64,000 nt of DNA from Macrostomum lignano (Eukaryota), in NCBI GenBank assembly GCA_002269645.1, contig NIVC01001491.1, positions 1 through 64,000 of the forward strand, given 5' to 3'. The notes below the pieces were generated by a model. The model was given only the letters and a program-made list of their open reading frames with translations, was not told where the DNA came from and made no database searches. This document shows, one piece after another, positions 33,675 to 64,000 of the stretch (position 1 is its first letter; every line of letters begins with the position of its first letter). The position numbers and the translations under genes were made by a program.

Positions 33675-34500
<826 letters not shown>

Positions 34501-35107: not shown

Positions 35108-37908
<2,801 letters not shown>

Positions 37909-39888: not shown

Positions 39889-40222
39889 CTCAGACTCAGA
39901 CTCAGCTACAAGGGGCTCTGGGCATCCGGATACAGCGGGGATAGGCTCGTTCCCATAGCCACTGGCAGCTATTGTGCTCCGGTGGAGCCGGTGGTACCTG
40001 CGTCCGCAGCGCAGTCCCCATCCAGTGAGTCCAGAAGGTACGCTCGCCCAGTTGCCCTTAGGTAGCTCGTACATGTAGAGGAAGAACTGGCAGAGATTCT
40101 CGGGTTCGAAGATTTTTGAAAGTCCGAGTTTGGGCCGAGGTTGTCGAACCTGTCCTGAGTCAAGGCAGGGCATTCACAGATGAAGTGCTCCGCATTCTCA
40201 CCGCCGGAGAGGCAGATACAAC
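39889..40222 (-). mobile_element. 3' fragment of an I/R1-type LINE (zinc knuckle + (GAGTCT)n tail)
   Basis: [24 protein letters not shown] resembles the C-terminus of the 4-7 kb LINE. Confidence 0.7.
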
Positions 40223-40919
40223 ACATGTACCATCGATTATAAGTGTTTTAGCGATATTTTTGAAACATATTTTCGAAAATTTGTCTCTGATCGCAATGGG
40301 TTTTATTTCCAAAATTGCATTTGCTCATCAAAGCTTGAACCATGCTGTTGATCACTGTACTCAGCTCGGATCGTAGATGATATTTTGCTTGACTTGTAAT
40401 AAATTTCAGATGGTCACCTGCTGATTATACGTTGGTGTGTGGTGTGTAGCAGGCAGGCATATTTTACGGGGTTCACAGTCTGTGAAGGTTAATAATGGTT
40501 GGCATGATCCAACGTCAAAAATTAGCCGCGTGTAGTTCAAGGAGTTCAGCGGACACTGTGTGTCTATCGAACTATGGCACGTGTCTCTTTAAGCAGTAGT
40601 TATTCTGATACTCGCCTGTCTGACATGACAAAGTTGAGATGTACGTGACATACATGTGGTGTAGTGGAGCCTAGAGTGCAGAGCAAATTTGTAACCTGCG
40701 ATCGAGAGTCTTTATAATGTTGCGATAACATGTAGCAAATGGAACTATAGCCTGTACCTCGGCCACTCTACCATTCTCTTCAATGTGCATCATTTCCTGT
40801 ATCTGATTGAAACCAGTGTGCAAATGGTTTCTATCACGGCCAAAAATGACTGAAACGCATACGGAATCAACTGTACAACCATCCATTGTGAAGAGTGAAA
40901 CTAGACCGGCTTTAACTTA

Positions 40920-41800
40920 CGAGGGGCGTGCTGAAAGTGTTGAGCACGTGTAGCCCATGAGTCACAGCTGCAGGCGCTTGTATTTACATATATCTATCAC
41001 CCTTCTAATGAAAGTATAGATCTTCAGCATCTTTTAAATGTTAATTATTCACAATTGCTTTTGAAAGTCGATTAGCACCCCTTATCAAAGGTACTCCATC
41101 CGATGAAACTCATAAATCGAAACTATAAATCGTATCATAATAGCTTACCACCAGCGAAAATGCAATGTCTCGAAAGTTTCACTCAGCCTTTGGAGACCAA
41201 GCCGGCCTTCCCCTGCCACGGTTTTTCGGTGGTACAATTATGAGGGCAAAGTGGGGCCAAAGAAGCCTTTTGATGACGAGCCTCTGAATATACGTCCAGC
41301 TTCTGCCGTCATGGATGAGAACATCGCTGCTGTTCGCAGAATGATTGATGAAGACCAACGTGTCGAGATCAAAGGATTGGTTCTGGGCATTGGATCGGCA
41401 GCGCTAACATATCCTTTCTGCATGAGAAGCTGGATCCTCCAAGCAATGCACCTGATTGAAACCTCACCACAACCTCCTGGAGGACCAAAAAGCGAACAAG
41501 GTTGCGTTCGTTAGTGCGAATTTGGGCAAGAATTATTTGATTTTGGCAGATCAAAGTGGTGCTGGGTGATCATCACAGCCGTGACGAAGAGACCTGAATC
41601 TGCATGTACCAGTATAGTACCCAGAAACCAAGCAGCAGTTTTCAGTTTGGCTCTTTTTGGATATACATGTATACACGACGACTACATTGCTCCAGGACAA
41701 TATTGCTCCAGGACTTACTGTTGTGGGTGCGCGAGCATACGTACTTAACTCTATATGTTCAGTGTGCGGCCCGTCGGGCACGTTAATTTGCGAAAACGCG
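40920..41800 (+). mobile_element. Highly decayed second-family mariner
   Basis: TA + CGAGGGGCGTGCTGAAAG left TIR; DENIAAVRRMIDEDQR-like HTH remnant and ITGDETW-like remnant. Confidence 0.7.
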
Positions 41801-41859
41801 TTACGCAATAATCTAACATCCAATTTTTCTCACAGCGTTAGAAAAAGTTAATATATTAA

Positions 41860-42646: not shown

Positions 42647-43400
42647 CCCCATCTTCTCACTCTGGAGCAGCAAGCAGAGAGGGTGCGCATCTGTCGCTTG
42701 TGGGTGCAAATGTTTGAGCCCCACGGCCCACGACGACTGTCGGATGTCATCACAGGAGACGAATGCTGGATCTCCTTCTTTTACCATGAAGGATAAGCAG
42801 TCCAACATCGTCTGGCTGGCAGAAGATGAGCCAAGGCCTGAGGTGCTGAAGACCGGATTCCGCAGTCGGAAGCGGATGTTCACCATTTTTCAACTCTCAG
42901 GGTGTTGTATCGGTGAACATCCTTCCAGCGGGTGCCGCAGTGACTGTCAGGTACTACACAGACACTTTTCTGCCAGGCGTGCTGCAGGAGCGGCAGGAAC
43001 GTGCGCGAACCAGGCATGGACCCCGACTCCTGCTGTACCATGACTGCGGCACCGCACAGAGCGGCCTCAAACATGACGTACCTGGAGCAGCAGGGGTCCG
43101 ACTGCTGCCCCATCCACCCTACTCTCCAGACCTAGCACCAGGCTGTTCCGAGGATCAAATCCGTCATTTGTGGGAGGCCATTTTCACGCATTCAAAACCT
43201 TGCCCAAGTGGTACATTCAGCTCTACAGGGTGTACCAACTTCGGAGTACCATGACTGCTTTCAGACGTGGTCCACACGCATGCGGAGGTGCATAGATGGT
43301 GATGGAAAGTACTTTGTGGGAATGGGACATTGGTTAGACGCCATGGCTGCTGTAACACTGAGTTGTGAGGTCACTTGCAGAACTTTTTGATCACCCCTCG
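42647..43400 (+). mobile_element. Defective mariner copy 2 (3' half)
   Basis: Same lesions as copy 1; right TIR followed by TA. Confidence 0.9.
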
Positions 43401-43595
43401 TATTAGCATAAGTGTGTGCCTGCGTACAGTATTTGCGCGCTTGCATGTGCTCAGGTTATGGGACACGATGTCACCGAAGAGTGCTCAGCAACCTTTACAA
43501 AATTATTAATTCTGTTAAACTTTGGTCTCGTAAAAGTCAAAACAACAATCAGATCTCGATCTACCTGCTAGTGACATTAGAATGTTGATGTTTAC

Positions 43596-44150
<555 letters not shown>

Positions 44151-44765
44151 TTGTTGCCGCATTCGACTCCGAACAAATTCCGAATAAATTCCAAACAAAT
44201 TACACAGCACCAGCGTCAAAGTAGCAATGATGAAATATTTTGGCAAAATTATCAGGCATAGAGCGGTATTGCTTACATTTGCTGGTTAGCAAACTCCAGA
44301 ATACATATTCTAGTCAAGCCATCAAGCTATTTGGATTTTTGGGCTTAATAACAAAAAATAGCAGGAAGGGGCTGCGGGCATCCTGAAGCAACGCCTTTGG
44401 CGACATCGTCCAACACAGCAGCGCTCACAGCAGTTCTACCCATTCAAAAAAAAATTGAATGGGCACTCTAGATAGTTAGATAGAACTCAGTAGAGAGACA
44501 ACTCATTTTTAATATAGTGGATGGATCTGCCCACGGTTGCAGGGGGGGGGTTGAAAAAGACAGCTGTATCTGCTGCGTCAGACTGCTTGTCTACTAGCTT
44601 GTCTGCTAAAAAGAGCCATGGCAGATGCACTGCAACATGAATTATTGATCAGAGAGGCTGCATGCGAGTATATCGACATATTGAATTGCCCACACACTCG
44701 TAGGATGCAGAAAGATAGTATTGCATCTGCGTAAAATGCTAGTTAGAGAAGCAGAAAGACTGGCG

Positions 44766-45153
<388 letters not shown>

Positions 45154-45417
45154 GGTAGTCAATGCAAACCAGTAAAATCAATATAAAGCACATGTGGGGA
45201 CAAAAAGTCCTTTAGACAGTAAAAAAACTCTCCAAGAGAAATGAAGGCTGAAAAGTCATTTTTCACTTGACACTTGTTTTTTGTTAAATATCAGTTGATA
45301 ATATTAACACATTTATTATCACGCGACTGTGTTTTTAATACTAAAAATAATTTGCGACAAAAAAGCAATCATACGCTCGTATTATCAACGATATAGGAAT
45401 TGTTGAACATTAAAAAG

Positions 45418-45690
45418 TTGTCCAAGAATCGTTGTTTTTGTCCTTAACTTTCTACTAACTCAGTAGGCTTGTTAGAGTGCAATTAGAGTTCAATGGGCTA
45501 CATTCGGTGTTTATGGCGTAACTGTAACTCTGACTCTTCTAATGCGGTTAGTGCGTCTCAGAAGTGGCGCACTAAAGACTCTACAGCGACTCTAGCACGC
45601 CTCAAGTACGACTCTACCGCTCCAAAGTCGTTTCACAGTCGCAGACAATAAAACGCTTCAAAGTGACTTTTAGGCGACTCTTTGGTGACT
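45418..45690. repeat. Dispersed GACTC-rich repeat, near-identical to 58198-58470
   Basis: One substitution noticed over ~270 bp (gactctagc vs gactccagc). Confidence 0.9.
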
Positions 45691-45784
45691 TGTACCGTGC
45701 CATCTCGTCATTTAGAGTCGTTAAGAGTCACTTCTTTCCTATTTTATTTGTCATATGAAACGACTCGGGGATTCAGAGCAGAGC

Positions 45785-46823
45785 GACTGAGATTCATACC
45801 GATCTGGTGAATGTTTTAGCTGACTCTGCTCCATCATTTGACATGGTTGCCCGCTGGCTGCGCCATTTCTCGGGAGGCCGGGACAGTTTTAACGATAAAC
45901 CGAGGTCTGGCCGACCCCGGACATCCGTGACCGAAGATGTTGTGGCCCGTGTCGATGCAATAATTCGTGAGGATTGGAGCATTACGCTGAGATTCCTTGC
46001 CTATGAGCTTGGTGTCAGCTATGGAAGTGCTCATAACATCATGCATGAGCAACTGGGCCGCACAAAGACCTGCGCTCGGTGGGTACCCCATTTTCTCACC
46101 CCGGAGCAGCAAGCAGAGAGGGTGCGCATCTGTCGCTTGTGGCTGCAAATGTTTGAGCCCCACGGCCCACGACGACTGTCGGATGTCATCACAGGAGACG
46201 AATGTTGGATCCCCTTCTTTACCATGAAAGATAAGCAGTCTAGCATGGTCTGGCTGGCAGAAAATGAGCCTAGGCCCGAGATGCTGAAGACCGGATTCCG
46301 CAGACAGAAGCGGATGTTCACCATTTTTCAACTCTCAGGGTGTTGTATCGGTGAACATCCTTCCAGCGGGTGCCGCAGTGACTGTCAGGTTCTACACAGA
46401 CACTGTTCTGCCAGGCGTGCTGCAGGAGCGGCAGGAACGTGCGCGAACCAGGCATGGACCTTGACTCCTGCTGCACCATGACTGCGGCACCGCACAGAGC
46501 GGCCTCAACCATGGCGTGCCTGGAGCAGCAGGGGGTCCGGCTGCTGCCCCATCCACCCTACTCTCCAGACCTAGCACCAGGCTGTTCCCGAGGATCAAAT
46601 CCATTTTCACGCATACAAAACCTTGCCCAAGTGGTACATTCAGCTCTACAGGGTATTCCAATTTCGGAGTACCATGACTGCTTTTAGACGTGGTCCAGAC
46701 GCATGCGAAGGTGCATAGATGGTGATGGAAAGTACTTTGTGGGAATGGGACATTGGTTAGACGCCATGGCTGCTGTAACACTGAGTTGTGAGGTCACTTG
46801 CAGAACTTTTTGATCACCCCTCG
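45785..46823 (+). mobile_element. Defective mariner copy 3
   Basis: Same motifs and the same post-YSPDLAP deletion; 5'-truncated; right TIR. Confidence 0.9.
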
Positions 46824-47034
46824 AGGATCCTGTGTGAGCGTGTGCATGAGTGCGTACCTGCGTACAGTATTTGCGCGCTTGCATGTGCTCAGGTTATGGG
46901 ACGCGATGTCACCGAAGGGTGCTCAGCAACCTTTACAAAAATATTAATTCTGTTAAACTTTGGTCTCGTAAAACTCAAAACAACAATCAGACCTCGATCT
47001 ACCTGCTAGTGACATTAGAATGTTGATGTTTACA

Positions 47035-47056
47035 AGTAGTAGTAGTAGTAGTAGTA

Positions 47057-47109
<53 letters not shown>

Positions 47110-47759
47110 TGATGTTGTTATTGTTGTTTTTGTTGTTGTTGTTGCTGTTGTTGCTGCATTCGGCTCCAAACAAATCCCGAATAAATTCCAAACAAATTAC
47201 ACAGCACCAGCGTCAAAGTAGCAATGATGAAATATTTTGGCAAAATTATCAGGCAGAGCGGTATTGCTTGCATTTGCTGGTTAGCAAACTCCAGAATACA
47301 TATTCTAGTCGAGCCATCAAGCTATTTGCATTTTTGGGCTTCATAAAAATAAATAGCAGGAAGGGGCTGCGGGGCATCCTGAAGCAACGCCTTTGGCGAC
47401 ATCGTCCAACACAGCAGCGCTCACGGCAATTCTACCCATTCTAAAAAAATAGAATGGAAACTCTCGATAGTTAGATAAACTCATTAGAGAGACAACTCAT
47501 TTTAATATAGTGGATGGATTTGCCCACGGTTGCAGGGGGGGTTGAAAAAGACAGCTGTATCTGCTGCGTCAGCCTGCTTGTCTACTAGCTTGTTTGCTAA
47601 AAAGAGCCATAACAGATGCAATGCAACATGAATTATTAATCACAGAGGCTGCATGCGAGTATATCGACATTTTGAATTGCCCACACACTCGTAGGATGCA
47701 GAAAGATGAGTGATGCATCTGCGTAAAATGCTAGTTAATAGAAAAACAGAAAGACTGGC

Positions 47760-47822
<63 letters not shown>

Positions 47823-47823
47823 G
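47035..47823. repeat. Third copy of the (AGT)n-spacer-(GATA)n module with short arrays (~75 bp and ~60 bp)
   Basis: Spacer homologous to 34500-35105 and 44150-44765. Confidence 0.95.
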
Positions 47824-48175
47824 AAGTTTCCAATTTCCTATATAGTAAAAATGAGATGTCTGAATGTAAATTTGCTAAATTCGACAGTCACATTTGACCA
47901 CGAGCTCGTAACGGAAAGTCTAACATATAGAGAATATCTACAAAGTTAAAAGAATAACGATAGATATACCCTTAGTGCCTCTGAAAAGTGTTTTTTGTGT
48001 CACAGCATCTCCTGGCCTTTCTAGTTTAGGGTCTCGATCGTGAATATTCTTTTAGATTAGTTACTCTTTCATCAGAAGTTTACATTTCCGCGGTGAATGG
48101 GACATTAGAATTGTTCAAACAGCATATGTTTCGGTCAAATGGAAACTCGATAGTAGAATTACATATCGGTAAATG

Positions 48176-48931
48176 TCAGGCGAACGGATCGATGCACTCG
48201 CACATCGCCATGGTGACTCCAGCGTTGACATCAGTCAAATCTTCCACTCCGGCCGAGTGAGTCGACCAGATGTCCAATCGGTTGGCGGAGACGCCTGCGT
48301 TCGGCTGTCCGGGTCCCCAGACTTCGGGCAGGAGGCCCAAGTTGCAGTCCAGCCAGAACCACGGATCGCCGACAGCACTTCCTGGCCGGTATCCGCCGAT
48401 GAAGAAGCTTTTGCCAGAGTTCACGTTGGTCTTGATCCAGTGGAAATGGGCCGTCTCGTTTCTCTCCAAGGCGTCGGCATATTTGGTGAGTCCGGGCATC
48501 GCCTCGCATGCTGTGCGACCGGCAGTCCAGCTAGCGGCGCTCACCACCTTGTAGGTGGAGCCGAAGTAGCCACTGCCGAAGCCGTCGGGGCACAGCTGGC
48601 CGTCCGGCAGACCCGGCTGGTTGCGAACGAAGGTCCAGGCGAAGTCGCTGCAGTCGGTGCGGACCAGCTGGCTCGGACTGCACTTGTCGAACACGAGGGC
48701 CCGGCACTTGGCGCCTCCTGCAGTCAGCTGGAATCCCTGGCAGCTCGGGCCCAGCCTAGCGCACGCTGAGGCGCACACGAACTCAGCGGTTCCATTGTCC
48801 GTGGCCAGCTCGCGAGTGAACTCCGGCTTCAGGCACATGCGGATGTACTTCAGAGCAAAGCCGAAGCCTAGGTCCTGGGAATTGACGCTCCCGACAGCTG
48901 CTAGCAGCATGAGAGCAAGCAGCCCAAGCAC
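48176..48931 (-). CDS. Secreted PAN/apple + C-type lectin protein, copy B
   Basis: 251-aa ORF differing from copy A at 9 residues. Confidence 0.85.
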   Translation of the reverse strand: MLGLLALMLLAAVGSVNSQDLGFGFALKYIRMCLKPEFTRELATDNGTAEFVCASACARLGPSCQGFQLTAGGAKCRALVFDKCSPSQLVRTDCSDFAWTFVRNQPGLPDGQLCPDGFGSGYFGSTYKVVSAASWTAGRTACEAMPGLTKYADALERNETAHFHWIKTNVNSGKSFFIGGYRPGSAVGDPWFWLDCNLGLLPEVWGPGQPNAGVSANRLDIWSTHSAGVEDLTDVNAGVTMAMCECIDPFA

Positions 48932-49504
48932 TGGAAATGAAGTTCAGGATTAGGTAGTGATTTCGGTTTTTTATTTGCAAAAAATCATGGTTAGATACAG
49001 CGTTGCCAGTCAGCTTACTAGTAATTTCCTGCGCGTTGTTTTGATGAACTTCTAGATTAGAACTTCTAGAACTTCTACTTCTAGAACTTCTAGATAGTTC
49101 TTGCTTTTTGCCTAGATGGTCTAGATGGCCTAGTTTAGTCTGTAGCAATATTGAGAGCAATTTATATTATGAGAATGATTGCAATCCTAAACTTTAAATA
49201 TTTTAGCTCGTAACTACAGCCCTTCTGAGCATGCAATTTTGTAGGGATACCGATAGAGAGGGTGTTTATGGCAGCTCTGTTAGAAATTCCTCAGTAATCC
49301 TATATACTAAAAATCCATACTATGAGTGAGGCACTGCAGAAGCAGCTCTCTCTTCCCTTGCCATTAGCTAATTGGATAAATTTACCTGTCATGGTCATAC
49401 CGGCATACGAAAGTCTCTCTTGCGTGCGATTCTGTCTACCCTCTAATATTTCATTTGCTCATGCTTTCATTGTTATAATAAGCTGTAAAATATAAAAATA
49501 TACA

Positions 49505-49852
49505 TACTCAGACTCAGACTCAGCTACAGACTCAGCAACAAGGGGCTCTGGGCATCCGGATACAGCGGGGACAGGCTCGTTCCCATAGCCACTGGCAGCT
49601 ATTGTGCTCCGGTAGAGCCGGTGGTACCTGCGTCCGCAGCGCAGTCCCCATCCAGTGAGTCCAGAAGGTGGATGGTCGCTCGCCCAGTAGCCCTTAGGTA
49701 CATGTAGAGGAAGAACTGGCAGAGATTCTCGGGTTCGAAGATTTCGGAAAGTCCGAGTTTGGGCCGAGGTTGTCGAGCCTGTCCTGAGTGAAGGCGGGCA
49801 TTCACAGATGAAGTGCTCCGCATTCTCACCACCGGAGAGGCAGATGCAACCC
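49505..49852 (-). mobile_element. Duplicate of the LINE 3' fragment
   Basis: Homologous to 39889-40222. Confidence 0.7.
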
Positions 49853-50548
49853 ATGTACCATCGATTATAAGTATTTTAGCGATATTTTTGAAACATATTT
49901 TCGAAAATATGTCTCTGGTCGCAATGGGTTTTATTTCCAAAATTGCATTTGCTCAACAAAGCTTGAACCATGCTGTTGATCACTGTACTCAGCTCGGATC
50001 GTAGATGATATTTTGCTTGACTTGTAATAAATTTCAGATGGTCACCAGCTGATTATACGTTGGTGTGTGATGTGTAGCAGGCAGGCATATTTTACGGGGT
50101 TCACAGTCTGTGAAGGTTAATAATGGTTGGCATGATCCAACGTCAAAAATTAGCCGCGTGTAGTTCAAGGAGTTCAGCGGACACTGTGTGTCTATCGAAC
50201 TATGGCACGTGTCTCTTTAAGCAGTAGTTATTCTGATACTCGCCTGTCTGACATGACAAAGTTGAGATGTACGTGACATACATGTGGTGTAGTGGAGCCT
50301 AGAGTGCAGAGCATATTTGCAACCTGCGATCGAGAGTCTTTATAATGTTGCGATAACATGTAGCAAATGGAACTATAGCCTGTACCTCGGCCACTCTATT
50401 ATTCTCTTCAATTTGCATCATTTCCTGTATCTGATTGAAACCAGCGTGCAAATGGTTTTTATCACGGCCAAAAATGACTGAAAACGCATACGGAATCAAC
50501 TGTACAACTATCCATTGTGAAGAGTGAAACTAGACCGGCCTTAACTTT

Positions 50549-51400
50549 CGAGGGGCGTGCTGAAAGTGTTGAGCTCGCGTGTAGCCCATGAGTCACAGCT
50601 GCAGGCGCTTGTATTTACATATATCTATCATCCTTCTAATGAAAGTATAGATCTTCAGCATCTTTTTAATGTTAATTATTCGCAATTGCTTTTGAAAGTC
50701 GATTAGCGCCCCTTATCAAAGGTACTCCATCCGATGAAACTCATAAATCGAAACTTAATTGTATCATAATAGCTTACGACCAGCGAAAATGCAATGTCTC
50801 GAAAGTTTCACTCAGCCTTTGGAGACCAAGCCGGCCTTCCCCTGCCACGGTTTTTCGGTGGTACAATTATGAGGGCAAAGTGGGGCCAAAGAAGCCTTTT
50901 GATGACGAGCCTCTGAATATACGTCCAGCTTCTGCCGTCCTGGATGAGAACATCGCTGCTGTTCGCAGAATGATTGATGAAGACCAACGTGTCGAGATCA
51001 AAGGATTGGTTCTGGGGATCTGGGCATTGGATCGGCAGCGCTAACATATCCTTTCTGCATGAGAAGCTGGATCCTCCAAACAATGCACCCGATTGAAACC
51101 TCACCACAACCTCCTGGAGGACCAAAAAGCGAACAAGGTTGCGTTCGTTAGTGGGAATTTGGGCAAGAATTATTTGATTTTGGCAGATCAAAGTGGTGCT
51201 GGGTGATCATCACAGCCGTGACGAAGAGACCTGAATCTGCATGTACCAGTATAGTACCCAGAAACCCAGCAGCAGTTTTCAGTTTGGCTCTTTTCGGATA
51301 TACATGGATACACGACGACTACATTGCTCCAGGACAATATTGCTCCAGGACTTACTGTTGTGAGTGCGCGACCATACGTACTTAACTAATTCTATGTTCA
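50549..51400 (+). mobile_element. Duplicate of the decayed second-family mariner
   Basis: Homologous to 40920-41800. Confidence 0.7.
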
Positions 51401-51498
51401 GTGTGCGGCCCGTCGGGCACGTTAATTTGCGAAACGCGTTACGCAATAATCTAACATCCAATTTTTCTCACAGCGTGCATGTTAATATATATGATGAG

Positions 51499-55795: not shown

Positions 55796-57481
55796 TTTTA
55801 TTAAAGCTATTAGTACAGCTACGCTCGTATTTAGCATTATTAAAGTTATGATTGTGTAGTTCTTTTCACCATCTTTGCTATCCGGGGTTAATTGTAATAA
55901 ACTAGAGAAAATAAACTTTTGTGATAAAATGACACTAAATACACTAATTAATGACACTAAAATTATAAAATGCAGCTGCTCAACTGAATGTACTTGACGT
56001 GACAGTGCCCATTTGAACCACTGTACTCTGGGAGAACTACGTGCATGTATTAAAAATTCGCTGCAGTCAAAAAATGCCTAGGCGCACAGATTAAAAAAAA
56101 CACTTTCGAAAAAAGTTCCAACAAACAAAACTTTGTTTTTTTACGCTGGGAGGCACTGCAATACATATAAAAAATTAGGTCCAGTCAGCAAACTTCTAGG
56201 CACACCGTTAAATAACAATTAGGAAAAAGTAGCTTGTATCTATAATCTACAAACAAATCTACAAACAAATCTGTCGCCGCTTTGATTGTCGCCAGATCGT
56301 CTTGTCACCAATTGGAAGCCAATTTAACACCGAACGCGAGTTATAACAATAATTTAAAAGTAAATGCTGTTATAAATTAAAAAAGTTTACACAGTTTTTT
56401 TAATGCTAAAAATAAAGACAGGATTTTATATTTACATTTAGTCTGTATTTTTTTAACAATACAGAATGGAAGCATGTGCACTGTAATTTAATGCGATTTT
56501 TTAGTATCATTTCATTGCATAATATTTTAAAAGCGGTGCGCTGTGAAACAACCAACCAACCCAAACTTGTTGAATAAGTTTCATGTCTATTATGTCATGA
56601 TATCATGTATTTATGTTTTATGTATTCATGTATTCATGTTTTATGTATTCATGTATTCATGTTTTATGTATTTTACAATTTGAAAAATCCTTATATTGTA
56701 TACATTTGGCTGTCAATTTTATTTTGTTTATTAGACCGACTAGCAGACTAATGACTTACATTCGAAGTTACCGCTCTTTCACCCTATGGATTTGTATAAA
56801 TTAGATGTAACCTGTATAATTATTTAAGTATTTTTGAAGTTTTGATTGATTTATTTTAAAGTTCATTATGATTTTGAAAGATTTTAGAAGATCCATAGGC
56901 TATGTAAATTTATAGTTATTCAATATAGAATATAGCTTTAGGTTCATCCTACAATGAGATTTTCATGCAAATTGTCTAAGCATACATTAAATTCTCGTCA
57001 ATAATAGTAAACATGTTGTGATAAATGAGCATAAAAAATATTTTTAGGTCATATTTAGATAAAATTAAAAATAAACAGACAAAATATTAATATTTATTTT
57101 TATGTATTTCATCTAGTCTAGACATTGTTAGGCTAGGCCTAATTTTTTAAATATTTTTCGAGCTTATACTTGTATACAAGATTAAAAGGTTTATTTAAAG
57201 GAATATATGTATTCAGCTTTTATGCTTTCAATCAGCATTATCCACTTTGTAAATATAAAACATCCTTGAGTAAATATTTTTTTTCGACAAATCATCAATT
57301 TATCAGAAAATTGATTGATAAGTTGGTTTTGAAATTTATAAACAAACTATTAATGATCCAAAGTACACTCAGAAACATGCTAACATCTCTGATTATTATG
57401 ATTATATTAATGAGTTACTATGTTATGACTTTTATGATATAATTACCAAATAATTGCAGCATTTGTTGAACAATAGCAGAC

Positions 57482-58026
57482 ATGTCAGATGGCAAGAATG
57501 CAAATTTCCATGTCACTGCCAGTCAGCACCTGTCCAATGCAATTCAGTCACTAGAGCGCCTTGCACTGGAAGTTGACCCCGATGAAGCTATCATTTCAGG
57601 TCTCGATGGGGAAGCTGCCTGGCTATCAGCGGAGCTGCGAGACATTCGACAGCGACTTCGGGATGCTCGCCTTCGAATGCACTCGCCGCGCCTGCTGCCA
57701 CCAGTGCCTGCTGTGCCTTCGCATCTTGAGGTTAATTCTCGAATATTTTCGAAGCTGAGATGAAGGGAAGAGTTGCTCAGCTACTCTCTGGTCAAGTGTC
57801 CCCGAGCTCGATTCTAAGGGTTGTGGGGCACCCTGGCGTAACGCCTTCGGCGACATCATCATCCCGCAACCAGCGCTTGAGGCAATCCGGCCCATTCCGC
57901 AGACTCCTGAGCGACATACAAGCGCGCCAATACTGTACACCGACACGCTCTAATTGCACTCGCTCACACGGGGTGTACAGCGGCCCTGACTTTCTAATCG
58001 TCAGGAATGAACACTCTGTGTCTTAG
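57482..58026 (+). CDS. Uncharacterised GC-rich ORF pair (57482-57763 + 57760-58026), possibly one frameshifted ORF or a 5' exon of the nucleotidyltransferase gene
   Basis: ATG in an AT-to-GC transition; helical N-terminus; adding one T in the TTTT at ~57745 fuses the two ORFs; no recognisable domain. Confidence 0.35.
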
Positions 58027-58471
58027 GGGCTGGGCCTCCCGTTGAAAACGTTACCGTGACAAGAATCGATAAAAAGGCGTTGTAAACAGCTCTCTAGTGA
58101 CTCTTGTGATTTTTTAACGACTCAAACGCGTCTAATGCGTCAAAGAGGCGACTGTTGCGTCACAAGCGCGTCACGTGACTTGCAGAATCGTGAAAGAGTT
58201 GTCCAAGAATCGTTGTTTTTGTCCTTAACTTTCTACTAACTCAGTAGGCTTGTTAGAGTGCAATTAGAGTTCAATGGGCTACATTCGGTGTTTATGGCGT
58301 AACTGTAACTCTGACTCTTCTAATGCGGTTAGTGCGTCTCAGAAGTGGCGCACTAAAGACTCTACAGCGACTCCAGCACGCCTCAAGTACGACTCTACCG
58401 CTCCAAAGTCGTTTCACAGTCGCAGACAATAAAACGCTTCAAAGTGACTTTTAGGCGACTCTTTGGTGACT

Positions 58472-60186
58472 AGATTCTCATGGGTTTGGGTGGCAGATTC
58501 TCATGGGTTTGGGTGGCAGATTCTCATGGGTTGACTGGCAGATTCTCATAGGTTGATTGGCAGATTCTCATGGGTTGAGTGGCAGATTCTCATGGGTTGA
58601 GTGGCAGATTCTCATGGGTTGATTGGCAGATTCTCATGGGTTGAGTGGCAGATTCTCATGGGTTTGGGTGGCAGATTCTCATGGGTTGAGTGGCAGATTC
58701 TCATGGGTTTGGGTGGCAGATTCTCATGGGTTTGGGTGGCAGATTCTCATGGGTTGATTGGCAGATTCTCATGGGTTGAGTGGCAGATTCTCATGGGTTG
58801 AGTGGCAGATTCTCATGGGTTGATTGGTAGATTCTCATGGGTTGAGTGGCAGATTCTCATGGGTTTGGGTGGCAGATTCTCATGGGTTTGGGTGGCAGAT
58901 TCTCATGGGTTTGGGTGGCAGATTCTCATGGGTTTGGGTGGCAGATTCTCATGGGTTGAGTGGCAGATTCTCATGGGTTGATTGGCAGATTCTCATGGGT
59001 TGAGTGGCAGATATTCTCATGGGTTGAGTGGCAGATTCTCATGGGTTGATTGGCAGATTCTCATGGGTTTGGGTGGCAGATTCTCATGGGTTGATTGGCA
59101 GATTCTCATGGGTTGAGTGGCAGATTCTCATGGGTTGAGTGGCAGATTCTCATGGGTTGATTGGCAGATTCTCATGGGTTGAGTGGCAGATTCTCATGGG
59201 TTTGGGTGGCAGAATCTCATGGGTTGAGTGGCAGATTCTCATGGGTTTGGGTGGCAGATTCTCATGGGTTTGGGTGGCAGATTCTCATGGGTTGAGTGGC
59301 AGATTCTCATGGGTTGATTGGCAGATTCTCATGGGTTGAGTGGCAGATATTCTCATGGGTTGAGTGGCAGATTCTCATGGGTTGATTGGCAGATTCTCAT
59401 GGGTTGAGTGGCAGATTCTCATGGGTTGAGTGGCAGATTCTCATGGGTTGAGTGGCAGATTCTCATGGGTTGATTGGCAGATTCTCATGGGTTGAGTGGC
59501 AGATTCTCATGGGTTTGGGTGGCAGATTCTCATGGGTTTGGGTGGCAGATTCTCATGGGTTTGGGTGGCAGATTCTCGTGGGTTGATTGGCAGATTCTCA
59601 TGGGTTGATTGGCAGATTCTCATGGGTTGAGTGGCAGATTCTCAAGAGTTGGGTGGCAGATTCTCATCGGTTGAGTGGCAGATTCTCATGAGTTTGGGTG
59701 GCAGATTCTCATGGGTTGAGTGGTAGATTCTCATGGGTTGAGTGGCAGATTCTCATGGGTTGAGTGGCAGATTCTCAAGAGTTGAGTGGCAGATTCTCAT
59801 GGGTTGAGTGGCAGATTCTCATGGGTTTGGGTGGCAGATTCTCATGAATTGAGTGGCAGATTCTCATGGGTTGAGTGGCAGATTCTCATGGGTTGAGAGG
59901 CAGATTCTCATGGGTTTGGGTGGCAGATTCTCATGGGTTGACAGGCAGATTCTCATGAATTAAGTGGCAGATTCTCATGAATTGAGTGGCAGATTCTCAT
60001 GGGTTGAGTGGCAGATTCTCATGGGTTGAGTGGCAGATTCTCATGGGTTGAGTGGCAGATTCTCAAGAGTTGGGTGGCAGATTCTCATGGGTTGAGTGGC
60101 AGATTCTCATGGGTTGAGAGGCAGATTCTCATGGGTTTGGGTGGCAGATTCTCATGGGTTGAGTGGCAGATTCTCATGGGTTGAGT
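58472..60186. repeat. 22-23-bp minisatellite (GGCAGATTCTCATGGGTTGAGT)n
   Basis: Tandem periodicity. Confidence 0.96.
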
Positions 60187-60223
60187 GAGACTCAACTAGC
60201 GCTGTTCAACCAACCCCAATCAG

Positions 60224-63200
60224 GGCATCGGCAGCATCTTCAAGAAGCAGCGAAACGGCGATCTCAAGATTCGGCCGGACGCCACCATCCCAGAGCTGTG
60301 CACCTCAATCAGACTGTTGAATCACGTCAAGATGTCTCTGCTCGGTCGCAGACCAAGTCTGTCTGAGCCGCCAGACACTGCAGACGTACCCGAAGGTGTT
60401 CTGTCCGGTTGGCGGCAGATGTTCGCCAGCCCATTGGCGGACATTGTCAAAGGCGGCTTGGCCAAGTCTCTGCTCGACTGGCACGCTGAATTGCTGGCTG
60501 AGTGTGACAGAGCGGAGGAGCTGGAAGCTGCGGGCTGCTCAGAAGAGAATAAAAATGTAATTATCGATTTGTTTCTATTTGTTTTCTTATGTAGTTTTAT
60601 TATCTACCGATGTCATGGATTATTTTAGGGAAAATAATCTTTAGCTTGATTAGACAGTAGATTAGGAATATTAGGTTTGCATTAGGGGAACTCGTAGGTT
60701 ATTAGGTATTGTATTAGGGGAACTCATAGGCTATTAGGTATTGAATTAGGGGAACTCATAGGCTATTAGGTATTGAATTAGGGGGAACTCGTAGGTTATT
60801 AGGTATTGAATTAGGGGAACTCATAGGCTATTACATGTAGGTATTGAATTAGGGGAACTCATAGGCTATTAGGTATTGAATTAGGGGAACTCATAGGCTA
60901 TTAGGTATTGGATTAGGGGAACTCATAGGCTATTAGGTATTGAATTAGGGGAACTCATAGGCTATTAGGTATTGAATTAGGGGAACTCATAGGCTATTAG
61001 GTATTGAATTAGGGGAACTCATAGGCTATTAGGTATTGAATTAGGGGAACTCATAGGCTATTAGGTATTGAATTAGAGAAACTCATAGGCTATTAGGTAT
61101 TGAATTAGAGAAACTCATAGGCTATTAGGTATTGAATTAGAGAAACTCATAGGCTATTAGGTATTGAATTAGGGGAACTCATAGGCTATTAGGTATTGAA
61201 TTAGGGGAACTCATAGACTATTTATTGCTCGTAGGCCAATTTGAATACCAACTATAGGATTAAAATTAAACAATTGACAGCCCAAAGACGCTGCCGCAGC
61301 CCGTCGCGCTCTGCTATCGTCGCAGTCGGCCGCCGACGAGGCCGCCCTCGCCGACTGGCGTTGGACAGAAATTTTGGCACCCCTGATGCCGCCCAAGTCA
61401 GCGCCAGATTCGGCGCCGGCTGTCGACTTCAAGTCAGCTCTGGTGTCCGCCGGTCTGCCCGCAGATCTGCTGCCATCAAGTTTGTCCACCGGCTCCTGGC
61501 GACTGGAGCTGGCGGCCTGTGCCGGCAGCCGGATGTACGGCCTGAGCACCCCGCAGTCGGATGTGGACTACCTGCTGGTGTACAGCCGGAGGGATGAGTT
61601 CAGGCACCTGCGGCATCCCCCAGACACAACCGAATCCAGGGGACCGGATAAGACCGTGAGTGAGCTCTTGATCCCTAATCCTCCTTAATCCTCACGGCTC
61701 CTAATCCTCTCGGCTCTTAATCACTAATCCTCCTTAATCCCCACGGCTCTTAATCCTCACGGCTCTTAATCACTAATCCTCCTTAATCCCCACGGCTCTT
61801 AATCCTCATTCTCTTAATCCTCACGGCTCTTAATCCTCACTGCTCTTAATCCTCACGGCTCTTAATCCTCACGGCTCTTAATCCCTAATCTTCCTTAATC
61901 CCCACGGCTCTTAATCCTCATATTTTCTTAATCCTCACGGTTCTTAATCCTCATATTTTCTTAATCCTCACGGTTCTTAATCCTCACTGCTCTTAATCCT
62001 CACGGCTCTTAATCCTCACTGCTCTTAATCCTCACGGCTCTTAATCCTCACGGCTCTTAATCCCTAATCCTCCTTAATCCCCACGGCTCTTAATCCTCAT
62101 ATTTTCTTAATCCTCATGGTTCTTAATCCTCACTGCTCTTAATCCTCACGGCTCTTAATCCCTAATCCTCCTTAATCCTCACGGCTCCTAATCCCTAATC
62201 CTCCTGAATCCTCACGGCTTCTAATCCCTAATCCTCCTTAATCCTCACGGCTCCTAATCCTCACGGCTCTTAATCCTCTCGGCTCTTAATCCTCACGGCT
62301 CTTAATCCCCAATCCTCCTTAATCCTCACGGCTCCTAATCCCTAATCCTCCTGAATCCTCACGGCTCCTAATCCTCACGGCTCCTAATCCTCTCGGCTCT
62401 TAATCCTTACGGCTCTTAATCCTCACGGCTCTTAATCCCTAATCCTCCTTAATCCTCACGGCTCTTAATCCCTACCCTAACCTCCTTAATCCTCACGGCT
62501 CTTAATCCTCTCGGCTCTTAATCCTCACGGCTCTTAATCCCTAATCCTCCTTAATCCTCACGGCTCCTAATCCCTAATCCTCCTGAATCCTCACGGCTCC
62601 TAATCCTCACGGCTCCTAATCCTCTCGGCTCTTAATCCTTACGGCTCTTAATCCTCACGGCTCTTAATCCCTAATCCTCCTTAATCCTCACGGCTCTTAA
62701 TCCCTAACCTCCTTAATCCTCACGGCTCTTAATCCCTAATCCTCCTTAATCCTCACGGCTCCTAATACCTAATCCTCCTGAATCCTCACGGCTCTTAATC
62801 CCTAATCCTCCTTAATCCTCACGGCTCCTAATCCCTAATCCTCCTGAATCCTCACGGCTCCTAATCCTCAGGGCTCTTAATACTTTCCCTAATCCTCACC
62901 ACCCATAATCCCAGATCGAGTTCGGTTGCTGCGAAGCAGCAGAGTTCGCCCGGCAGTTGCTCAGGGGCAGCATAGTGCAGCTGGAGCTGCTGTTCGCACA
63001 GCCGGCCGCTCGGCTGTTCGTGTCGCCCGCCTTCGACTGGCTGCTGCAGCGGCGGATGCGTCTGGCCACGGAGAACTTCATCAGGCAGCTGCTGGGACTG
63101 GCGAGTCAGCTGGTCAGGACGCTGAGCAAAGCGGAGGTGCTTGGCAAGAGTTTAAACTTGGTGAATTAGAGTTTGCAGCTTAGTGAATTAGAGTTTACAG

Positions 63201-63806
63201 CTTAGTGAATTAGAGTTTACAGCTTAGTGAATTAGAGTTTACAGCTTAGGGAACTAGAGTTTGGAGCTTAGTGAATTAGAGTTTACAGCTTAGGGAACTA
63301 GAGTTTGGAGCTTAGAGAATTAGAGTTTGGAGCTTAGTGAATTAGAGTTTACAGCTTAGGGAATTAGAATTTGGAGCTTAGTGAATTAGAGTTTAGAGCT
63401 TAGTGAATTAGAATTTGGAGCTTAGTGAATTAGAGTTTAGAGCTTAGGGAATTAGAATTTGGAGCTTAGTGAATTAAGAGTTTTTAGCTTAGGGAATTAG
63501 AGTTTAGAGCTAAGTGCATTAGAGTTTACAGTTTAGTGAATTAGAATTTAGCTTGTACTGTTGACGTTGCAATCTCCACCCATCGCAGGTCAACCCAGAC
63601 CAGTTCCCACCAGCTGAGGCCCGCAAGGTGGGCAAGGCTGCCTACCAGCTTGAGCACAAACTCAACCTTCTGACTGACCTGGCCGCGGGCATCGAACCCC
63701 GAGTCACCCTGGAGGGTGCCGAGCGCGAGCGAGTGCTGGCTCTGAGATCAGCTGACTGGGCCGACCCTGCCAGCAGGCGGGCACTGGCTCGGGCCTCACT
63801 CGACAG
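60224..63806 (+). CDS. RlaP/PF10127-like pol-beta-superfamily nucleotidyltransferase, partial. Exons 60224-60556, 61281-61655, 62915-63160 (alt. end 63136), 63589-63806; continues beyond the window
   Basis: GSRMYGLSTPQSDVDY (GS..D.D metal-binding motif); EAAEFARQLLRGSIVQLELLF; KAAYQLEHKLNLL..G..PRVTL...RERVLALR; all introns are GT-AG and phase-compatible. Confidence 0.85.
60680..61216. repeat. 32-bp minisatellite (AGGTATTGAATTAGGGGAACTCATAGGCTATT)n, intronic
   Basis: Tandem periodicity. Confidence 0.95.
61672..62900. repeat. Compound 16/17-bp pyrimidine-rich minisatellite (TAATCCTCACGGCTCT / TAATCCCTAATCCTCCT), intronic
   Basis: Tandem periodicity with mixed subunits. Confidence 0.95.
63160..63552. 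repeat. 22-bp minisatellite (GTGAATTAGAGTTTACAGCTTA)n, intronic
   Basis: Tandem periodicity beginning at the splice donor. Confidence 0.94.
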
Positions 63807-64000
63807 GTAAGACGTTTTAAAGCTCTTTATGTGAGGCTGTTTGACCTTCTAATGTATCCTAGTGCACTGGGACCTTGAAATGTCACCTGATTGAAATTGC
63901 AACCTTCAGGTGTTAACAGATTTAAAAAGGACCTTCAAATACTTTAAATTATCGCCTCTTGGAGACAATGGTCCTTCAAATATCACCTGGTAGAGAATAT

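What the first reader, a model, noticed from the sequence alone, without database searches (positions are those of the whole stretch)
60224..63806. Intron-containing animal gene of the mainly bacterial/phage RlaP nucleotidyltransferase family, with tandem domains
Seen: an intact GS-x-YGL-x-T-x-x-SDxD catalytic motif and the downstream helical motifs. The preceding exons encode what looks like the C-terminal half of another unit (ELCTSIRLLNHVKMSLLGRRPSL ... ADEAALADWRW), whose N-terminal half is not visible in the window. Known: PF10127 (RlaP) is a pol-beta-fold family predicted to act in RNA repair or conflict systems, mostly in prokaryotes and phages. Inference: a domesticated, possibly horizontally acquired RNA-end-modifying, ligating or signalling enzyme of unknown role in an animal. 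This is the best candidate here for an undescribed system.
Basis: partly seen in the sequence, partly recalled or inferred. Interest (0 to 1): 0.78.

Follow-up and report, generated by a model that had tools for sequence, protein, structure and literature searches.

The report
Flatworm RlaP-type RNA nucleotidyltransferase gene
This is a real, intron-containing flatworm (Macrostomum lignano) gene for a bacterial/phage-type "RlaP" nucleotidyltransferase; it belongs to an old, uncharacterised animal gene family rather than being a recent horizontal transfer, and probably adds nucleotides to RNA 3' ends.

Summary
Window 60224-63806 holds exons 2-5 of a six-exon + strand gene, all with GT-AG splice sites. 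Exon 1, with the ATG, is at 57482-57730. Exon 6 lies about 340 bp beyond the window end. The window tail is 100% identical to M. lignano contig NIVC01001491.1, gene BOX15_Mlig021218g1, a 508-aa "hypothetical protein".

Residues ~250-500 form a full RlaP (PF10127) unit. hhalign against standalone RlaPs gives 99.8% probability, E 1e-30. The G276-S277...D288-x-D290 signature is intact, and Glu321 sits at the third catalytic position.

Exon 2 is homologous to the helical half of a second, catalytically dead RlaP-like unit. That unit precedes the active one in ~610-aa orthologues of molluscs, annelids, a brachiopod, a nemertean and sponges. M. lignano has lost its alpha/beta core.

The suggestion of horizontal acquisition is not: the family is inherited within animals. 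It is also uncharacterised.

Two gene copies differ by 6 synonymous and 1 non-synonymous change, so the gene is under constraint. The function is inferred from bacterial RlaP biochemistry: untemplated addition of nucleotides to RNA 3' ends. Transcription was not shown.

The parts
57482..57730 (+). Exon 1 (aa 1-83), with the start codon ATG at 57482 and a donor GT at 57731. It encodes a predicted helical N-terminus.
   Evidence: There is an exact match to residues 1-83 of P0001/P0179. The exon is present in all three M. lignano copies. Similarity to the N-terminal helix of orthologues (AIQSLERL against consensus ALQxxERL) is only suggestive, with domain score -1 bit.
57731..60223 (+). Intron 1 (2493 nt). 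It is mostly a 22-bp minisatellite of about 77 copies at 58472-60187. It contains no remnant of the lost pseudo-NTase core.
   Evidence: TRF result. No HMM or tblastn hit to orthologue positions 65-233 was found here or elsewhere in the window. The stretch 57796-58099 is an indel relative to copy L001.
60224..60556 (+). Exon 2 (aa 84-194). It is the surviving helical half of the first, catalytically dead RlaP-like unit (GIGSIFKKQRNGDLKIRPDATIPELCTSIRLLNHV...).
   Evidence: The orthologue HMM A4, positions 234-327, matches at 34 bits and E 6e-13. The N-unit HMM matches at E 5e-08. The orthologues' N-unit is itself RlaP-like: hhalign 98.4%, E 1e-14 against standalone RlaPs, and 96.2%, E 2e-09 against their own C-unit.
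61281..61655 (+). Exon 3 (aa 195-319). It encodes a linker plus the start of the active RlaP unit: strand 1, G276-S277, Y280, S287-D288-V-D290 (61524-61568) and the ESRGP motif.
   Evidence: Searches support the residue assignments. In the AF2 model the strands are 267-275 and 289-297, with pLDDT above 90.
62915..63136 (+). Exon 4 (aa 320-393). It carries strand IEFGCCE, with Glu321 (62918-62920) at the position of the third catalytic carboxylate and the invariant Glu326. It also carries RGSI..LELLF (equivalent to KGNP..ELLF) and the F/L-x-T-E and Q-x-x-G helices.
   Evidence: Alignment A3 with standalone RlaPs. The invariants are kept. The AF2 strand is 320-326.
63589..63806 (+). Exon 5 (aa 394-466, ending in phase 2). 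It encodes the helical domain with the invariant K409 (63634-63636), Y412 and the ERERVLALR motif. The gene continues beyond the window: exon 6 (43 aa plus stop) would lie at about 64341-64470.
60557..61280 (+). Intron 2 (724 nt), with a 32-bp minisatellite of 17 copies at 60669-61222.
61656..62914 (+). Intron 3 (1259 nt). It is almost entirely a 16/33/49-bp minisatellite at 61664-62881.
63137..63588 (+). Intron 4 (452 nt). It is almost entirely a 22-bp minisatellite of 18 copies at 63147-63551.

Best explanation
Shown: the locus is the 5' ~92% of M. lignano gene BOX15_Mlig021218g1. The gene has six exons and encodes 508 aa. It is a divergent orthologue of an old, vertically inherited animal/eukaryotic subfamily of RlaP (PF10127) Pol-beta-fold nucleotidyltransferases. 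In that subfamily a catalytically dead RlaP-like unit precedes an active one. In M. lignano the alpha/beta core of the dead unit (about 170 aa) has been lost in frame. What remains is an N-terminal helix, the helical half of unit 1, a linker and a complete unit 2. Unit 2 keeps G276-S277, D288, D290, E321 and 23 of the 27 residues that are invariant in 23 orthologues. The coding sequence is under purifying selection. Inferred: the protein is an active, template-independent nucleotidyltransferase. It would use two metal ions held by D288, D290 and E321 to transfer one or a few NMPs from NTPs to the 3'-OH of RNA ends. This is the activity reported for bacterial RlaP on damaged RNAs and tRNAs, so the likely role is RNA-end repair or remodelling. 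More speculative: the helical remnant of unit 1 packs against, or extends, the RNA-binding cleft of unit 2. In the full-length orthologues, the dead unit would stand in for the partner subunit of a dimeric nucleotidyltransferase.
For: Gene model: all splice sites are GT-AG, the exons join in frame, and the product is identical to PAA67339.1.
Family: M. lignano unit 2 alone against a profile of 33 standalone RlaPs gives hhalign 99.8%, E 1.1e-30 over 226 columns. It hits phrog_388 'nucleotidyltransferase' at E 6.7e-15. 73 of 81 HMMER homologues hit PF10127, and the nearest animal homologues score 42-52 bits against a threshold of 23. The AF2 model of residues 250-500 has pLDDT above 90. Its best fold matches are phage nucleotidyltransferases (E 5e-10, TM up to 0.77-0.82), then Hailong HalB and ANT(4') in the PDB.
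Catalytic residues and invariants are kept.
Tandem architecture: the orthologue N-unit matches their C-unit at 96.2%, E 2.4e-09, and matches standalone RlaPs at 98.4%, E 9.8e-15. Exon 2 matches the N-unit helical half at E 6e-13.
Vertical descent: full-length orthologues occur in Lophotrochozoa and sponges, and a sponge and a limpet share 10 intron positions and phases.
Constraint: the window copy and copy L001 differ by 6 synonymous and 1 non-synonymous change, giving pN/pS 0.06 and binomial P 0.0016.
RNA link: bacterial RlaP adds 1-2 NMP to RNA 3'-OH (PMC12776372). YTH-RlaP fusions occur in Lineus, Biomphalaria and Platysulcus.
Against: No biochemical or expression data exist for any eukaryotic member. 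No transcript-derived copy of the M. lignano protein was found in the collections searched. The M. lignano protein is below Pfam's gathering score. The third catalytic residue is Glu rather than the 'strictly conserved' Asp of bacterial RlaP, and the KGNP motif is RGSI. The RNA-ligase gene neighbourhood that gave RlaP its name cannot apply here, and the window holds no RNA-repair gene. The third M. lignano copy carries a stop codon and a broken donor in exon 2, so the N-terminal part may be dispensable or decaying. The closest solved fold, HalB, makes DNA oligomers and does not extend RNA ends.
Confidence: 0.6

Rival explanations
1. It is a signalling nucleotidyltransferase. Like Hailong HalB or the CD-NTases, it would synthesise a free or protein-primed oligonucleotide or second messenger that controls an effector, for example in invertebrate immunity, and would not repair RNA ends.
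For: The best matches among solved structures are HalB chains (E 1.5e-4, TM about 0.5 normalised to HalB). HalB makes oligodeoxyadenylate primed on a tyrosine. The tandem dead-plus-active arrangement resembles oligomeric signalling nucleotidyltransferases.
Against: The fold match is weak and is shared with ANT(4') and LinB, so it reflects the general fold. Sequence and profile relationships are to RlaP, not to defence families: PADLOC gave no hit and the PDB sequence search with the family profile gave none. Phage RlaP-type proteins match the model far better. No partner effector is evident, and eukaryotic paralogues are fused to the RNA-binding YTH domain.
Confidence: 0.12
2. It nucleotidylates a small molecule or a protein, in the manner of ANT(4'), LinB or an AMPylase, and does not act on RNA.
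For: Kanamycin nucleotidyltransferase, LinB and AadA-type enzymes appear among the fold hits (E 2e-4 to 1e-2).
Against: These are superfamily-level similarities (TM 0.3-0.45, 12-14% identity). The family-level assignment is RlaP, for which only RNA was a substrate among E. coli macromolecules (PMC12776372).
Confidence: 0.07
3. The M. lignano gene is a decaying or non-catalytic relic. After losing the first unit's core it may be unexpressed, or it may act only as a binding protein.
For: About 170 residues that are conserved in all orthologues are missing. One of the three copies has a nonsense codon and a destroyed splice donor. The protein is on a long branch. No transcript evidence was found.
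Against: Two copies keep intact 508-codon reading frames with pN/pS 0.06 (P 0.0016). All catalytic residues and 23 of 27 invariants of the active unit are kept, and the four changes are conservative. All splice sites are intact. Even the damaged third copy retains an open active unit (P0180).
Confidence: 0.12
4. It is a recent horizontal transfer of a bacterial or phage RlaP gene into the Macrostomum lineage, as the first reader suggested as a possibility.
For: PF10127 is overwhelmingly bacterial and viral (PMC12776372). None of the five M. lignano intron positions matches the ten conserved in other animals. The neighbour-joining tree does not resolve its position (bootstrap 120/300).
Against: The nearest relatives by score are animal proteins: Mytilus, Lymnaea, Capitella and sponges. 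The M. lignano gene carries the helical half of the eukaryote-specific dead first unit (E 6e-13), which standalone bacterial and phage proteins lack. It also shares the subfamily motifs ESRG, E-x-G-x-x-E and KGS-V/I in place of KGNP.
Confidence: 0.03

Closest known systems
Lophotrochozoan and sponge ~610-aa 'uncharacterized protein LOC...' orthologues (e.g. Mytilus californianus XP_052084005.1, Lottia LOTGIDRAFT_233515, Lingula LOC106178780, Capitella CAPTEDRAFT_207458, Ephydatia EMCRGX_G033875, Sycon LOC135813966)
   Same: They share the active RlaP unit: 168 bits to their HMM, 23 of 27 invariant residues, and the ESRG, EYGxxE and KGS-V/I motifs. They share the helical half of a preceding dead RlaP-like unit, and possibly the N-terminal helix.
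   Different: M. lignano lacks the alpha/beta core and first helices of the dead unit (orthologue residues ~66-234). It is only 25-36% identical. It shares none of the ten intron positions conserved from sponge to limpet. None of these proteins has a known function.
Bacterial RlaP (P. fluorescens and P. aeruginosa RlaP; Pfam PF10127) and phage T4 NrdC.11-type nucleotidyltransferases
   Same: They have the same single-unit architecture for unit 2: an N-terminal Pol-beta nucleotidyltransferase core plus a C-terminal helical domain closed by a terminal helix. The two align end to end (hhalign 99.8%, E 1e-30). The GS...DxD signature and the invariant Lys are the same. Phage members are the best fold matches.
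   Different: The bacterial and phage proteins are standalone ~220-300-aa proteins encoded beside RNA ligases (RtcB and others). Their third catalytic residue is Asp where this protein has Glu, and they have KGNP where this protein has RGSI. They have no dead partner unit. Their activity, adding 1-2 NMP to RNA 3'-OH, is known only from a 2025 preprint.
YTH-RlaP fusion proteins of other eukaryotes (Lineus XP_064635683.1, Biomphalaria LOC106054443, Platysulcus)
   Same: They are eukaryotic, intron-era RlaP-family enzymes, and they pass the PF10127 threshold.
   Different: They carry an N-terminal YTH (m6A-RNA-binding) domain in place of the dead RlaP unit. They are more distant from the M. lignano protein (E 3e-05 to 4e-04).
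Hailong HalB (PDB 9dbh, 9dbi, 9dbj)
   Same: It is the closest solved structure by fold, a two-lobed nucleotidyltransferase of about 220 aa.
   Different: The similarity is at fold level only (13-16% identity, TM ~0.5). There is no sequence-profile link. HalB makes tyrosine-primed oligo-dA that gates the HalA channel, and no such partner is present here.
Eukaryotic 3'-end nucleotidyltransferases (TUTases, non-canonical poly(A) polymerases, CCA-adding enzyme)
   Same: They have the same superfamily fold and the same kind of chemistry as predicted here, untemplated NMP addition to RNA 3'-OH. This comparison rests on established knowledge.
   Different: There are no profile hits to PAP_assoc, TUTase, OAS1_C or Mab-21. 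Poly(A) polymerase structures match only at E ~0.4. The C-terminal helical domain is different.

Membership tests
RlaP (Pfam PF10127) | Pol-beta nucleotidyltransferase signature: hG[GS], then 9-13 residues, then DxD, on strand-helix-strand | tested here: met
   G276-S277 and D288-V-D290 are encoded at 61524-61568. They align with the nearly invariant GS and SDxD columns of 32 and 81 family members. The AF2 model has strands 267-275 and 289-297 flanking helix 276-279.
RlaP (Pfam PF10127) | Third catalytic carboxylate ('three strictly conserved aspartic acids', PMC12776372) | tested here: inconclusive
   The aligned position is Glu321, on predicted strand 320-326. It is Glu in all 23 animal orthologues and Asp in most standalone RlaPs. 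Glu is chemically plausible but it is not the Asp of the characterised enzymes.
RlaP (Pfam PF10127) | C-terminal helical domain alignable over its whole length, including the invariant Lys and the terminal W-L-x-x-x-R helix | tested here: met
   hhalign aligns 226 columns covering template positions 8-234 of 262. K409 is the only column invariant in all 81 sequences. The terminal helix (DFLTDWLQVV) is encoded by exon 6, outside the window, and was seen in P0179 and L002.
RlaP (Pfam PF10127) | Score at or above Pfam's gathering threshold (23 bits) | tested here: not met
   The spliced window product scores 19.2 bits, E 0.0011. The full protein has no family at E<=0.001. The closest animal orthologues score 31.7-52.5 bits, and precomputed PF10127 calls exist for about 40 orthologues.
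RlaP (Pfam PF10127) | Gene neighbourhood with RNA ligase or RNA-repair genes (the origin of the name) | tested here: not met
   No such gene is in the window. The neighbours are retroelements, mariner-like elements and an LRAT-domain reading frame, with an AJM1_C gene downstream. Operon context is not expected in an animal genome.
RlaP (Pfam PF10127) | Addition of 1-2 NMP to RNA 3'-OH in vitro | not testable with these tools
   This needs recombinant protein and labelled RNA substrates.
Animal/eukaryotic tandem subfamily (dead RlaP-like unit + active RlaP unit, ~610 aa) | Active C-terminal unit with the subfamily motifs (E-S/N-R-G, E-x-G-x-x-E, K/R-G-S-V/I, R-x-x-R-x-x-E) | tested here: met
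   It scores 168 bits, E 1.7e-53, to an HMM built from 23 orthologues without M. lignano. 23 of 27 invariant residues are kept.
Animal/eukaryotic tandem subfamily (dead RlaP-like unit + active RlaP unit, ~610 aa) | Complete N-terminal dead unit (C-P-W-Y/F in place of G-S, and so on) | tested here: not met
   Only HMM positions 234-327 are present (34 bits, E 6e-13). Positions 65-233 have no counterpart in the protein, in intron 1 or anywhere in the 64-kb window. The same is true of the two other M. lignano copies.
Animal/eukaryotic tandem subfamily (dead RlaP-like unit + active RlaP unit, ~610 aa) | Conserved intron positions (10 shared in position and phase between Ephydatia and Lottia) | tested here: not met
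   The M. lignano introns fall after residues 83, 194, 319 and 393 and within codon 466 (HMM ~340, 439, 511, 577). None coincides with the conserved set 39, 167, 262, 302, 360, 418, 463, 478, 524, 562.
Hailong HalB-type defence nucleotidyltransferase | Sequence or profile relationship, and a partner HalA channel | tested here: inconclusive
   The fold match is weak (E 1.5e-4, TM ~0.5). No PDB sequence hit was found with the family profile. PADLOC v2.0.0 (2023) gave no hit, but it may predate Hailong. A membrane partner cannot be sought by operon logic in an animal.
Eukaryotic TUTase / PAP / OAS / cGAS-Mab21 nucleotidyltransferases | Family-specific domains (PAP_assoc, TUTase, OAS1_C, Mab-21) | tested here: not met
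   Pfam reports only RlaP and weak generic NTP_transf_2 or Polbeta matches for the M. lignano protein and ten homologues. PAP structures match at E ~0.4.

The most novel reading that the evidence does not exclude
The ~610-aa dead-plus-active RlaP proteins of sponges and lophotrochozoans, including this reduced flatworm version, would be a previously unrecognised animal RNA-end repair or editing enzyme inherited from early eukaryotes. The inactivated duplicate domain would serve as a built-in partner or RNA sensor. In Macrostomum the gene would have been rebuilt, possibly through a processed retrocopy, since all ancestral introns are gone. It would then have acquired five new introns now filled by minisatellites and lost the dead unit's core, showing that the active unit plus a helical stub is sufficient.
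Probability: 0.3. Interest if true: 0.65.

Novelty: new variant of a known kind. Interest (0 to 1): 0.45.

Why it matters
RlaP is a large, mostly bacterial and phage nucleotidyltransferase family. Its first biochemistry appeared only in a 2025 preprint, which reported addition of one or two nucleotides to damaged RNA 3' ends before ligation.

This work shows that a conserved, intron-rich orthologue group exists in sponges and many lophotrochozoans. That suggests some animals keep a second, non-TUTase route for remodelling RNA 3' ends. Such a route could be relevant to tRNA repair after ribotoxin or stress cleavage, alongside the universal RtcB ligase.

The group has a distinctive architecture: a dead unit followed by an active unit. 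I found no published paper describing this architecture.

The M. lignano gene is a natural deletion variant. It tests which parts of that architecture are needed, and M. lignano is a laboratory model in which RNAi and transgenesis are established.

The finding is not a horizontal transfer and not a new class of system. The sequences are already in databases with automatic PF10127 labels.

Tried and rejected
- A single-sequence AF2 run gave an unusable model (pLDDT 41). It was replaced by a run with an 81-sequence alignment.
- A profile search of the word-indexed protein database with alignment A1 returned only the query. The direct search with the M. lignano product found only M. lignano proteins. 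The exhaustive HMMER search and a search with the Mytilus orthologue were what revealed the family.
- NCBIfam, PADLOC, PDB sequence searches (single sequence and profile) and Rfam over the whole window gave nothing.
- The search for the missing pseudo-NTase core found nothing. tblastn with 11 homologues and three HMMs (N-unit, C-unit, full orthologue) against every stop-free stretch of the window hit no exon upstream, in intron 1 or elsewhere. The 96-codon open stretch at 57736-58023 has no similarity and is interrupted by an indel in copy L001, so I rejected it as an exon.
- Phylogeny was weak. A Biopython bootstrap timed out, and a first neighbour-joining run was invalid because of saturated distances. 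The corrected run places the M. lignano unit on a long branch inside a 44-member group of long eukaryote-type proteins, with only 120/300 bootstrap support. The argument for vertical descent therefore rests on architecture and subfamily motifs, not on the tree.
- Literature searches for Mlig000355 and for PF10127 in eukaryotes found no functional work.
- The unit-1 remnant alone against standalone RlaPs is not significant (E 0.33). Its assignment depends on the orthologues as intermediates.


Full report
**1. What is in the sequence**

The + strand of window 60224-63806 contains four open segments bounded by AG...GT: 60224-60556, 61281-61655, 62915-63136 and 63589-63806. They join in frame into a 382-residue product.

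These include GSRMYGLSTPQSDVDY, encoded at 61524-61568.

A word-indexed search found a 100% match to a 508-aa GenBank protein of the flatworm Macrostomum lignano. Using that protein I located exon 1 at 57482-57730, with the ATG at 57482 and a donor GT at 57731.

The window tail 56001-64000 is 100.0% identical to contig NIVC01001491.1 of assembly GCA_002269645.1. The gene there is BOX15_Mlig021218g1, protein PAA67339.1. On that contig the sixth and last exon (43 codons) begins about 535 bp after exon 5. That corresponds to window coordinates of about 64341-64470, outside the window.

The gene starts 2.7 kb earlier and ends just beyond the window.

**2. The surroundings**

The rest of the window is repeat-rich animal DNA. 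It holds:
- a Ty3/gypsy-like retroelement at ~21.8-25.9 kb;
- mariner-like fragments;
- an LRAT-domain open stretch;
- long micro- and minisatellite arrays;
- a ~9-kb direct segmental duplication.

No Rfam family reaches threshold, and no RNA-repair gene is present. Antisense open stretches over the exons are short, GC-driven and without homologues.

Each of introns 1-4 consists mostly of its own minisatellite.

**3. Family assignment**

Pfam gives RlaP (PF10127) as the top hit for the spliced product, but below threshold: 19.2 bits against 23, E 0.0011. Taken alone that is not membership. Independent evidence closes the gap.

- An exhaustive HMMER search of 1.84 billion representatives gave 104 hits. 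Of the 81 that I aligned, 73 hit PF10127, with a best E of 1e-30.
- The nearest animal homologues score 32-52 bits.
- The M. lignano active unit alone, compared with a profile of 33 standalone ~220-300-aa RlaPs, gives hhalign probability 99.8% and E 1.1e-30 over 226 columns. That is essentially the whole domain.
- It hits phage family phrog_388 'nucleotidyltransferase' at E 6.7e-15.
- An AF2 model built with the 81-sequence alignment has pLDDT above 90 over residues ~250-500. Its best matches are phage nucleotidyltransferases in BFVD (E 5e-10, TM up to 0.77-0.82).
- Among solved structures the best matches are Hailong HalB, kanamycin nucleotidyltransferase, LinB and 3c18. Poly(A) polymerases appear only at E ~0.4.
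- No TUTase, OAS or cGAS-type domain is detected.
- No solved structure is related at sequence level, even with a family profile.

**4. Catalytic integrity**

These residues align with the nearly or fully invariant columns of the family: G276, S277, Y280, S287, D288, D290, E326, K409 and Y412.

The position of the third catalytic carboxylate is Asp in most standalone RlaPs. It is Glu321 here, on predicted strand 320-326, and it is Glu in all 23 animal orthologues.

Of the 27 residues invariant in the active unit of those orthologues, M. lignano keeps 23. The four changes are conservative: K to R, Y to F, W to F and L to A.

**5. The 'tandem' claim**

The best non-Macrostomum hits are ~610-aa proteins in which the RlaP unit is C-terminal. 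Their N-terminal ~290 residues, aligned as a group, match two things:
- their own C-terminal unit, at hhalign 96.2% and E 2.4e-09 over 235 columns;
- standalone RlaPs, at 98.4% and E 9.8e-15 over 228 columns.

In this N-terminal unit the catalytic residues are replaced. The GS is C-P-W-Y/F, and the SDxD is lost. The orthologues are therefore 'dead RlaP-like unit plus active RlaP unit'.

M. lignano exon 2 matches the helical half of that dead unit: orthologue HMM positions 234-327, 34 bits, E 6e-13, with an HMM that contains no M. lignano sequence.

Positions 65-233, the alpha/beta core and first helices, have no counterpart. They are missing from the protein, from intron 1 and from every stop-free stretch of the 64-kb window. 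All three M. lignano copies show the same reduced structure.

The half is not hidden outside the window. It has been deleted from the gene, in frame.

Exon 1 may correspond to the conserved N-terminal helix (AIQSLERL against ALQxxERL), but that match is not significant.

**6. Origin**

A search with the Mytilus orthologue returned full-length (86-100% coverage) ~600-640-aa proteins, all unnamed. They come from many bivalves and gastropods, a chiton, the brachiopod Lingula, the annelid Owenia, the nemertean Lineus and the sponge Ephydatia. Capitella, Sycon and Lymnaea, and the protists Diphylleia, Platysulcus and Mastigamoeba, were identified among the first hits.

I mapped the exon structure of the Ephydatia and Lottia genes. 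They share ten intron positions with identical phases. This is an old animal gene with a conserved structure.

M. lignano shares the subfamily's architecture and motifs. It is therefore a divergent orthologue, or at least a member of the same eukaryotic lineage, and not a recent import from bacteria or phage.

Two caveats apply.
- My neighbour-joining tree puts it on a long branch within the group of long eukaryote-type proteins with only 40% bootstrap support.
- None of its five introns coincides with the ten conserved positions.

The second caveat points to complete intron turnover. That could have occurred through a processed copy that later gained introns. I could not test this.

**7. Is the gene alive?**

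The window copy and copy L001 (BOX15_Mlig000355g4) differ at 7 of 1527 coding positions: 6 synonymous and 1 non-synonymous (S250F). This gives pN/pS 0.06 and binomial P 0.0016. The upstream non-coding flank is 96% identical, but short unique intron stretches are 94-100% identical. The case for constraint therefore rests on the synonymous/non-synonymous ratio, not on an exon/intron contrast.

A third copy (Mlig000355g2, L003) carries Q148* and a GT-to-TA donor change in exon 2. It is annotated as a 279-aa protein consisting of the active unit only.

The active unit is thus conserved in all copies. The N-terminal remnant is under looser constraint in at least one.

I found no transcript-derived sequence for the M. 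lignano protein, so transcription is not shown. Oyster orthologues do occur on many ~2-kb Logan contigs, each carrying the whole 600-aa reading frame. That is what transcripts would look like.

**8. Mechanism (inferred)**

The only biochemistry for the family is a December 2025 preprint (PMC12776372). It reports the following for Pseudomonas RlaP:
- it uses only RNA among cellular macromolecules;
- it adds one or two NMPs to RNA 3'-OH, preferring damaged RNAs;
- it has an NTase domain and a helical domain forming a cleft, with three conserved acidic residues on one side and a basic floor on the other;
- it can restore a nucleotide removed from a tRNA before ligation.

Unit 2 conserves both domains and the catalytic residues. 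I therefore propose that the flatworm protein performs the same chemistry on RNA 3' ends.

Independent support for an RNA role in eukaryotes comes from fusions of RlaP units to YTH domains, which are m6A-RNA readers (established knowledge). These fusions occur in Lineus, Biomphalaria and Platysulcus.

The idea that the dead unit acts as a built-in partner, a pseudo-dimer, is my inference. It is by analogy with oligomeric relatives such as HalB and dimeric ANT(4') (established knowledge).

**9. Rivals**

- A HalB-like signalling synthase is supported only by a weak fold match.
- An ANT/LinB-like small-molecule transferase is supported only at superfamily level.
- A decaying or non-catalytic relic is contradicted by the selection signal and the intact catalytic set, but it is not excluded without expression data.
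- Recent horizontal transfer is contradicted by the architecture and the taxonomic distribution.

**10. Novelty and score**

The gene is annotated only as 'hypothetical protein'. Its orthologues carry automatic PF10127 labels, and the preprint notes in passing that a few RlaPs are eukaryotic.

I found no paper describing three things:
- the conserved animal orthologue group;
- its dead-plus-active tandem architecture;
- the reduced Macrostomum form.

I rate it a new variant of a known kind. It is of moderate interest (0.45). It is a well-defined, testable, uncharacterised animal enzyme family, but it is not a horizontal transfer and not a new kind of system.

Noticed in passing
window 57731-63588 (introns 1-4): Each intron of the gene is mostly a different minisatellite: 22 bp x77, 32 bp x17, 16/33/49 bp x~73 and 22 bp x18. 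In introns 3 and 4 the array starts 8-10 nt after the donor and ends 33-37 nt before the acceptor. None of the five intron positions matches the ten positions and phases shared by the sponge and limpet orthologues. This suggests complete intron turnover, possibly a retrocopy origin followed by intron gain.
   Followed up: partly
L003 7032-7364 (NIVC01001584.1, BOX15_Mlig000355g2): A third M. lignano copy of the gene has a nonsense codon (Q148*) and a destroyed exon-2 donor (GT to TA). It is annotated as a 279-aa protein containing only the active RlaP unit. The N-terminal remnant may therefore be dispensable, or this copy may be decaying.
   Followed up: partly
P0066 (Lineus longissimus), P0090/P0131 (Biomphalaria glabrata), P0011 (Platysulcus tardus): A second kind of eukaryotic RlaP protein has an N-terminal YTH (m6A-RNA-binding) domain fused to the RlaP unit. 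Many protist homologues (for example P0022, P0027, P0053) carry two or three RlaP units in tandem.
   Followed up: partly
L004 (Ephydatia) and L005 (Lottia): The sponge and limpet orthologues share 10 intron positions with identical phases across about 600 codons. In the sponge, the neighbouring gene upstream on the opposite strand is a CAF1-family deadenylase (PF04857).
   Followed up: partly
window ~32700-41840 and ~42650-51480: There is a direct segmental duplication of about 9 kb at 93-98% identity. It carries mariner-like transposase fragments, long trinucleotide arrays (33.6-34.6 and 43.5-44.2 kb) and a duplicated ~255-codon open stretch (38602-39372 and 48179-48943, minus strand) with no Pfam hit.
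   Followed up: partly
window 21772-25949 (+): A Ty3/gypsy-like LTR retroelement has long open gag (zf-CCHC) and pol (protease, RNase H, integrase) stretches of 452 and 1008 codons.
   Followed up: no
window 34990-37994 and 44645-45211: Very long, strongly G-over-C-skewed and AT-rich tandem arrays are present (GC 0.27-0.33, GC skew up to 0.89). On the minus strand they read as LSIY repeats. Further G-over-C-skewed but GC-richer arrays lie at 8-12 kb (GC 0.47-0.63).
   Followed up: no
window 56-955 (-): An open stretch has an LRAT/NlpC-P60-type domain (PF04970, E 3e-07) next to other open stretches at 1278-3085 (-) that have no family hit.
   Followed up: no
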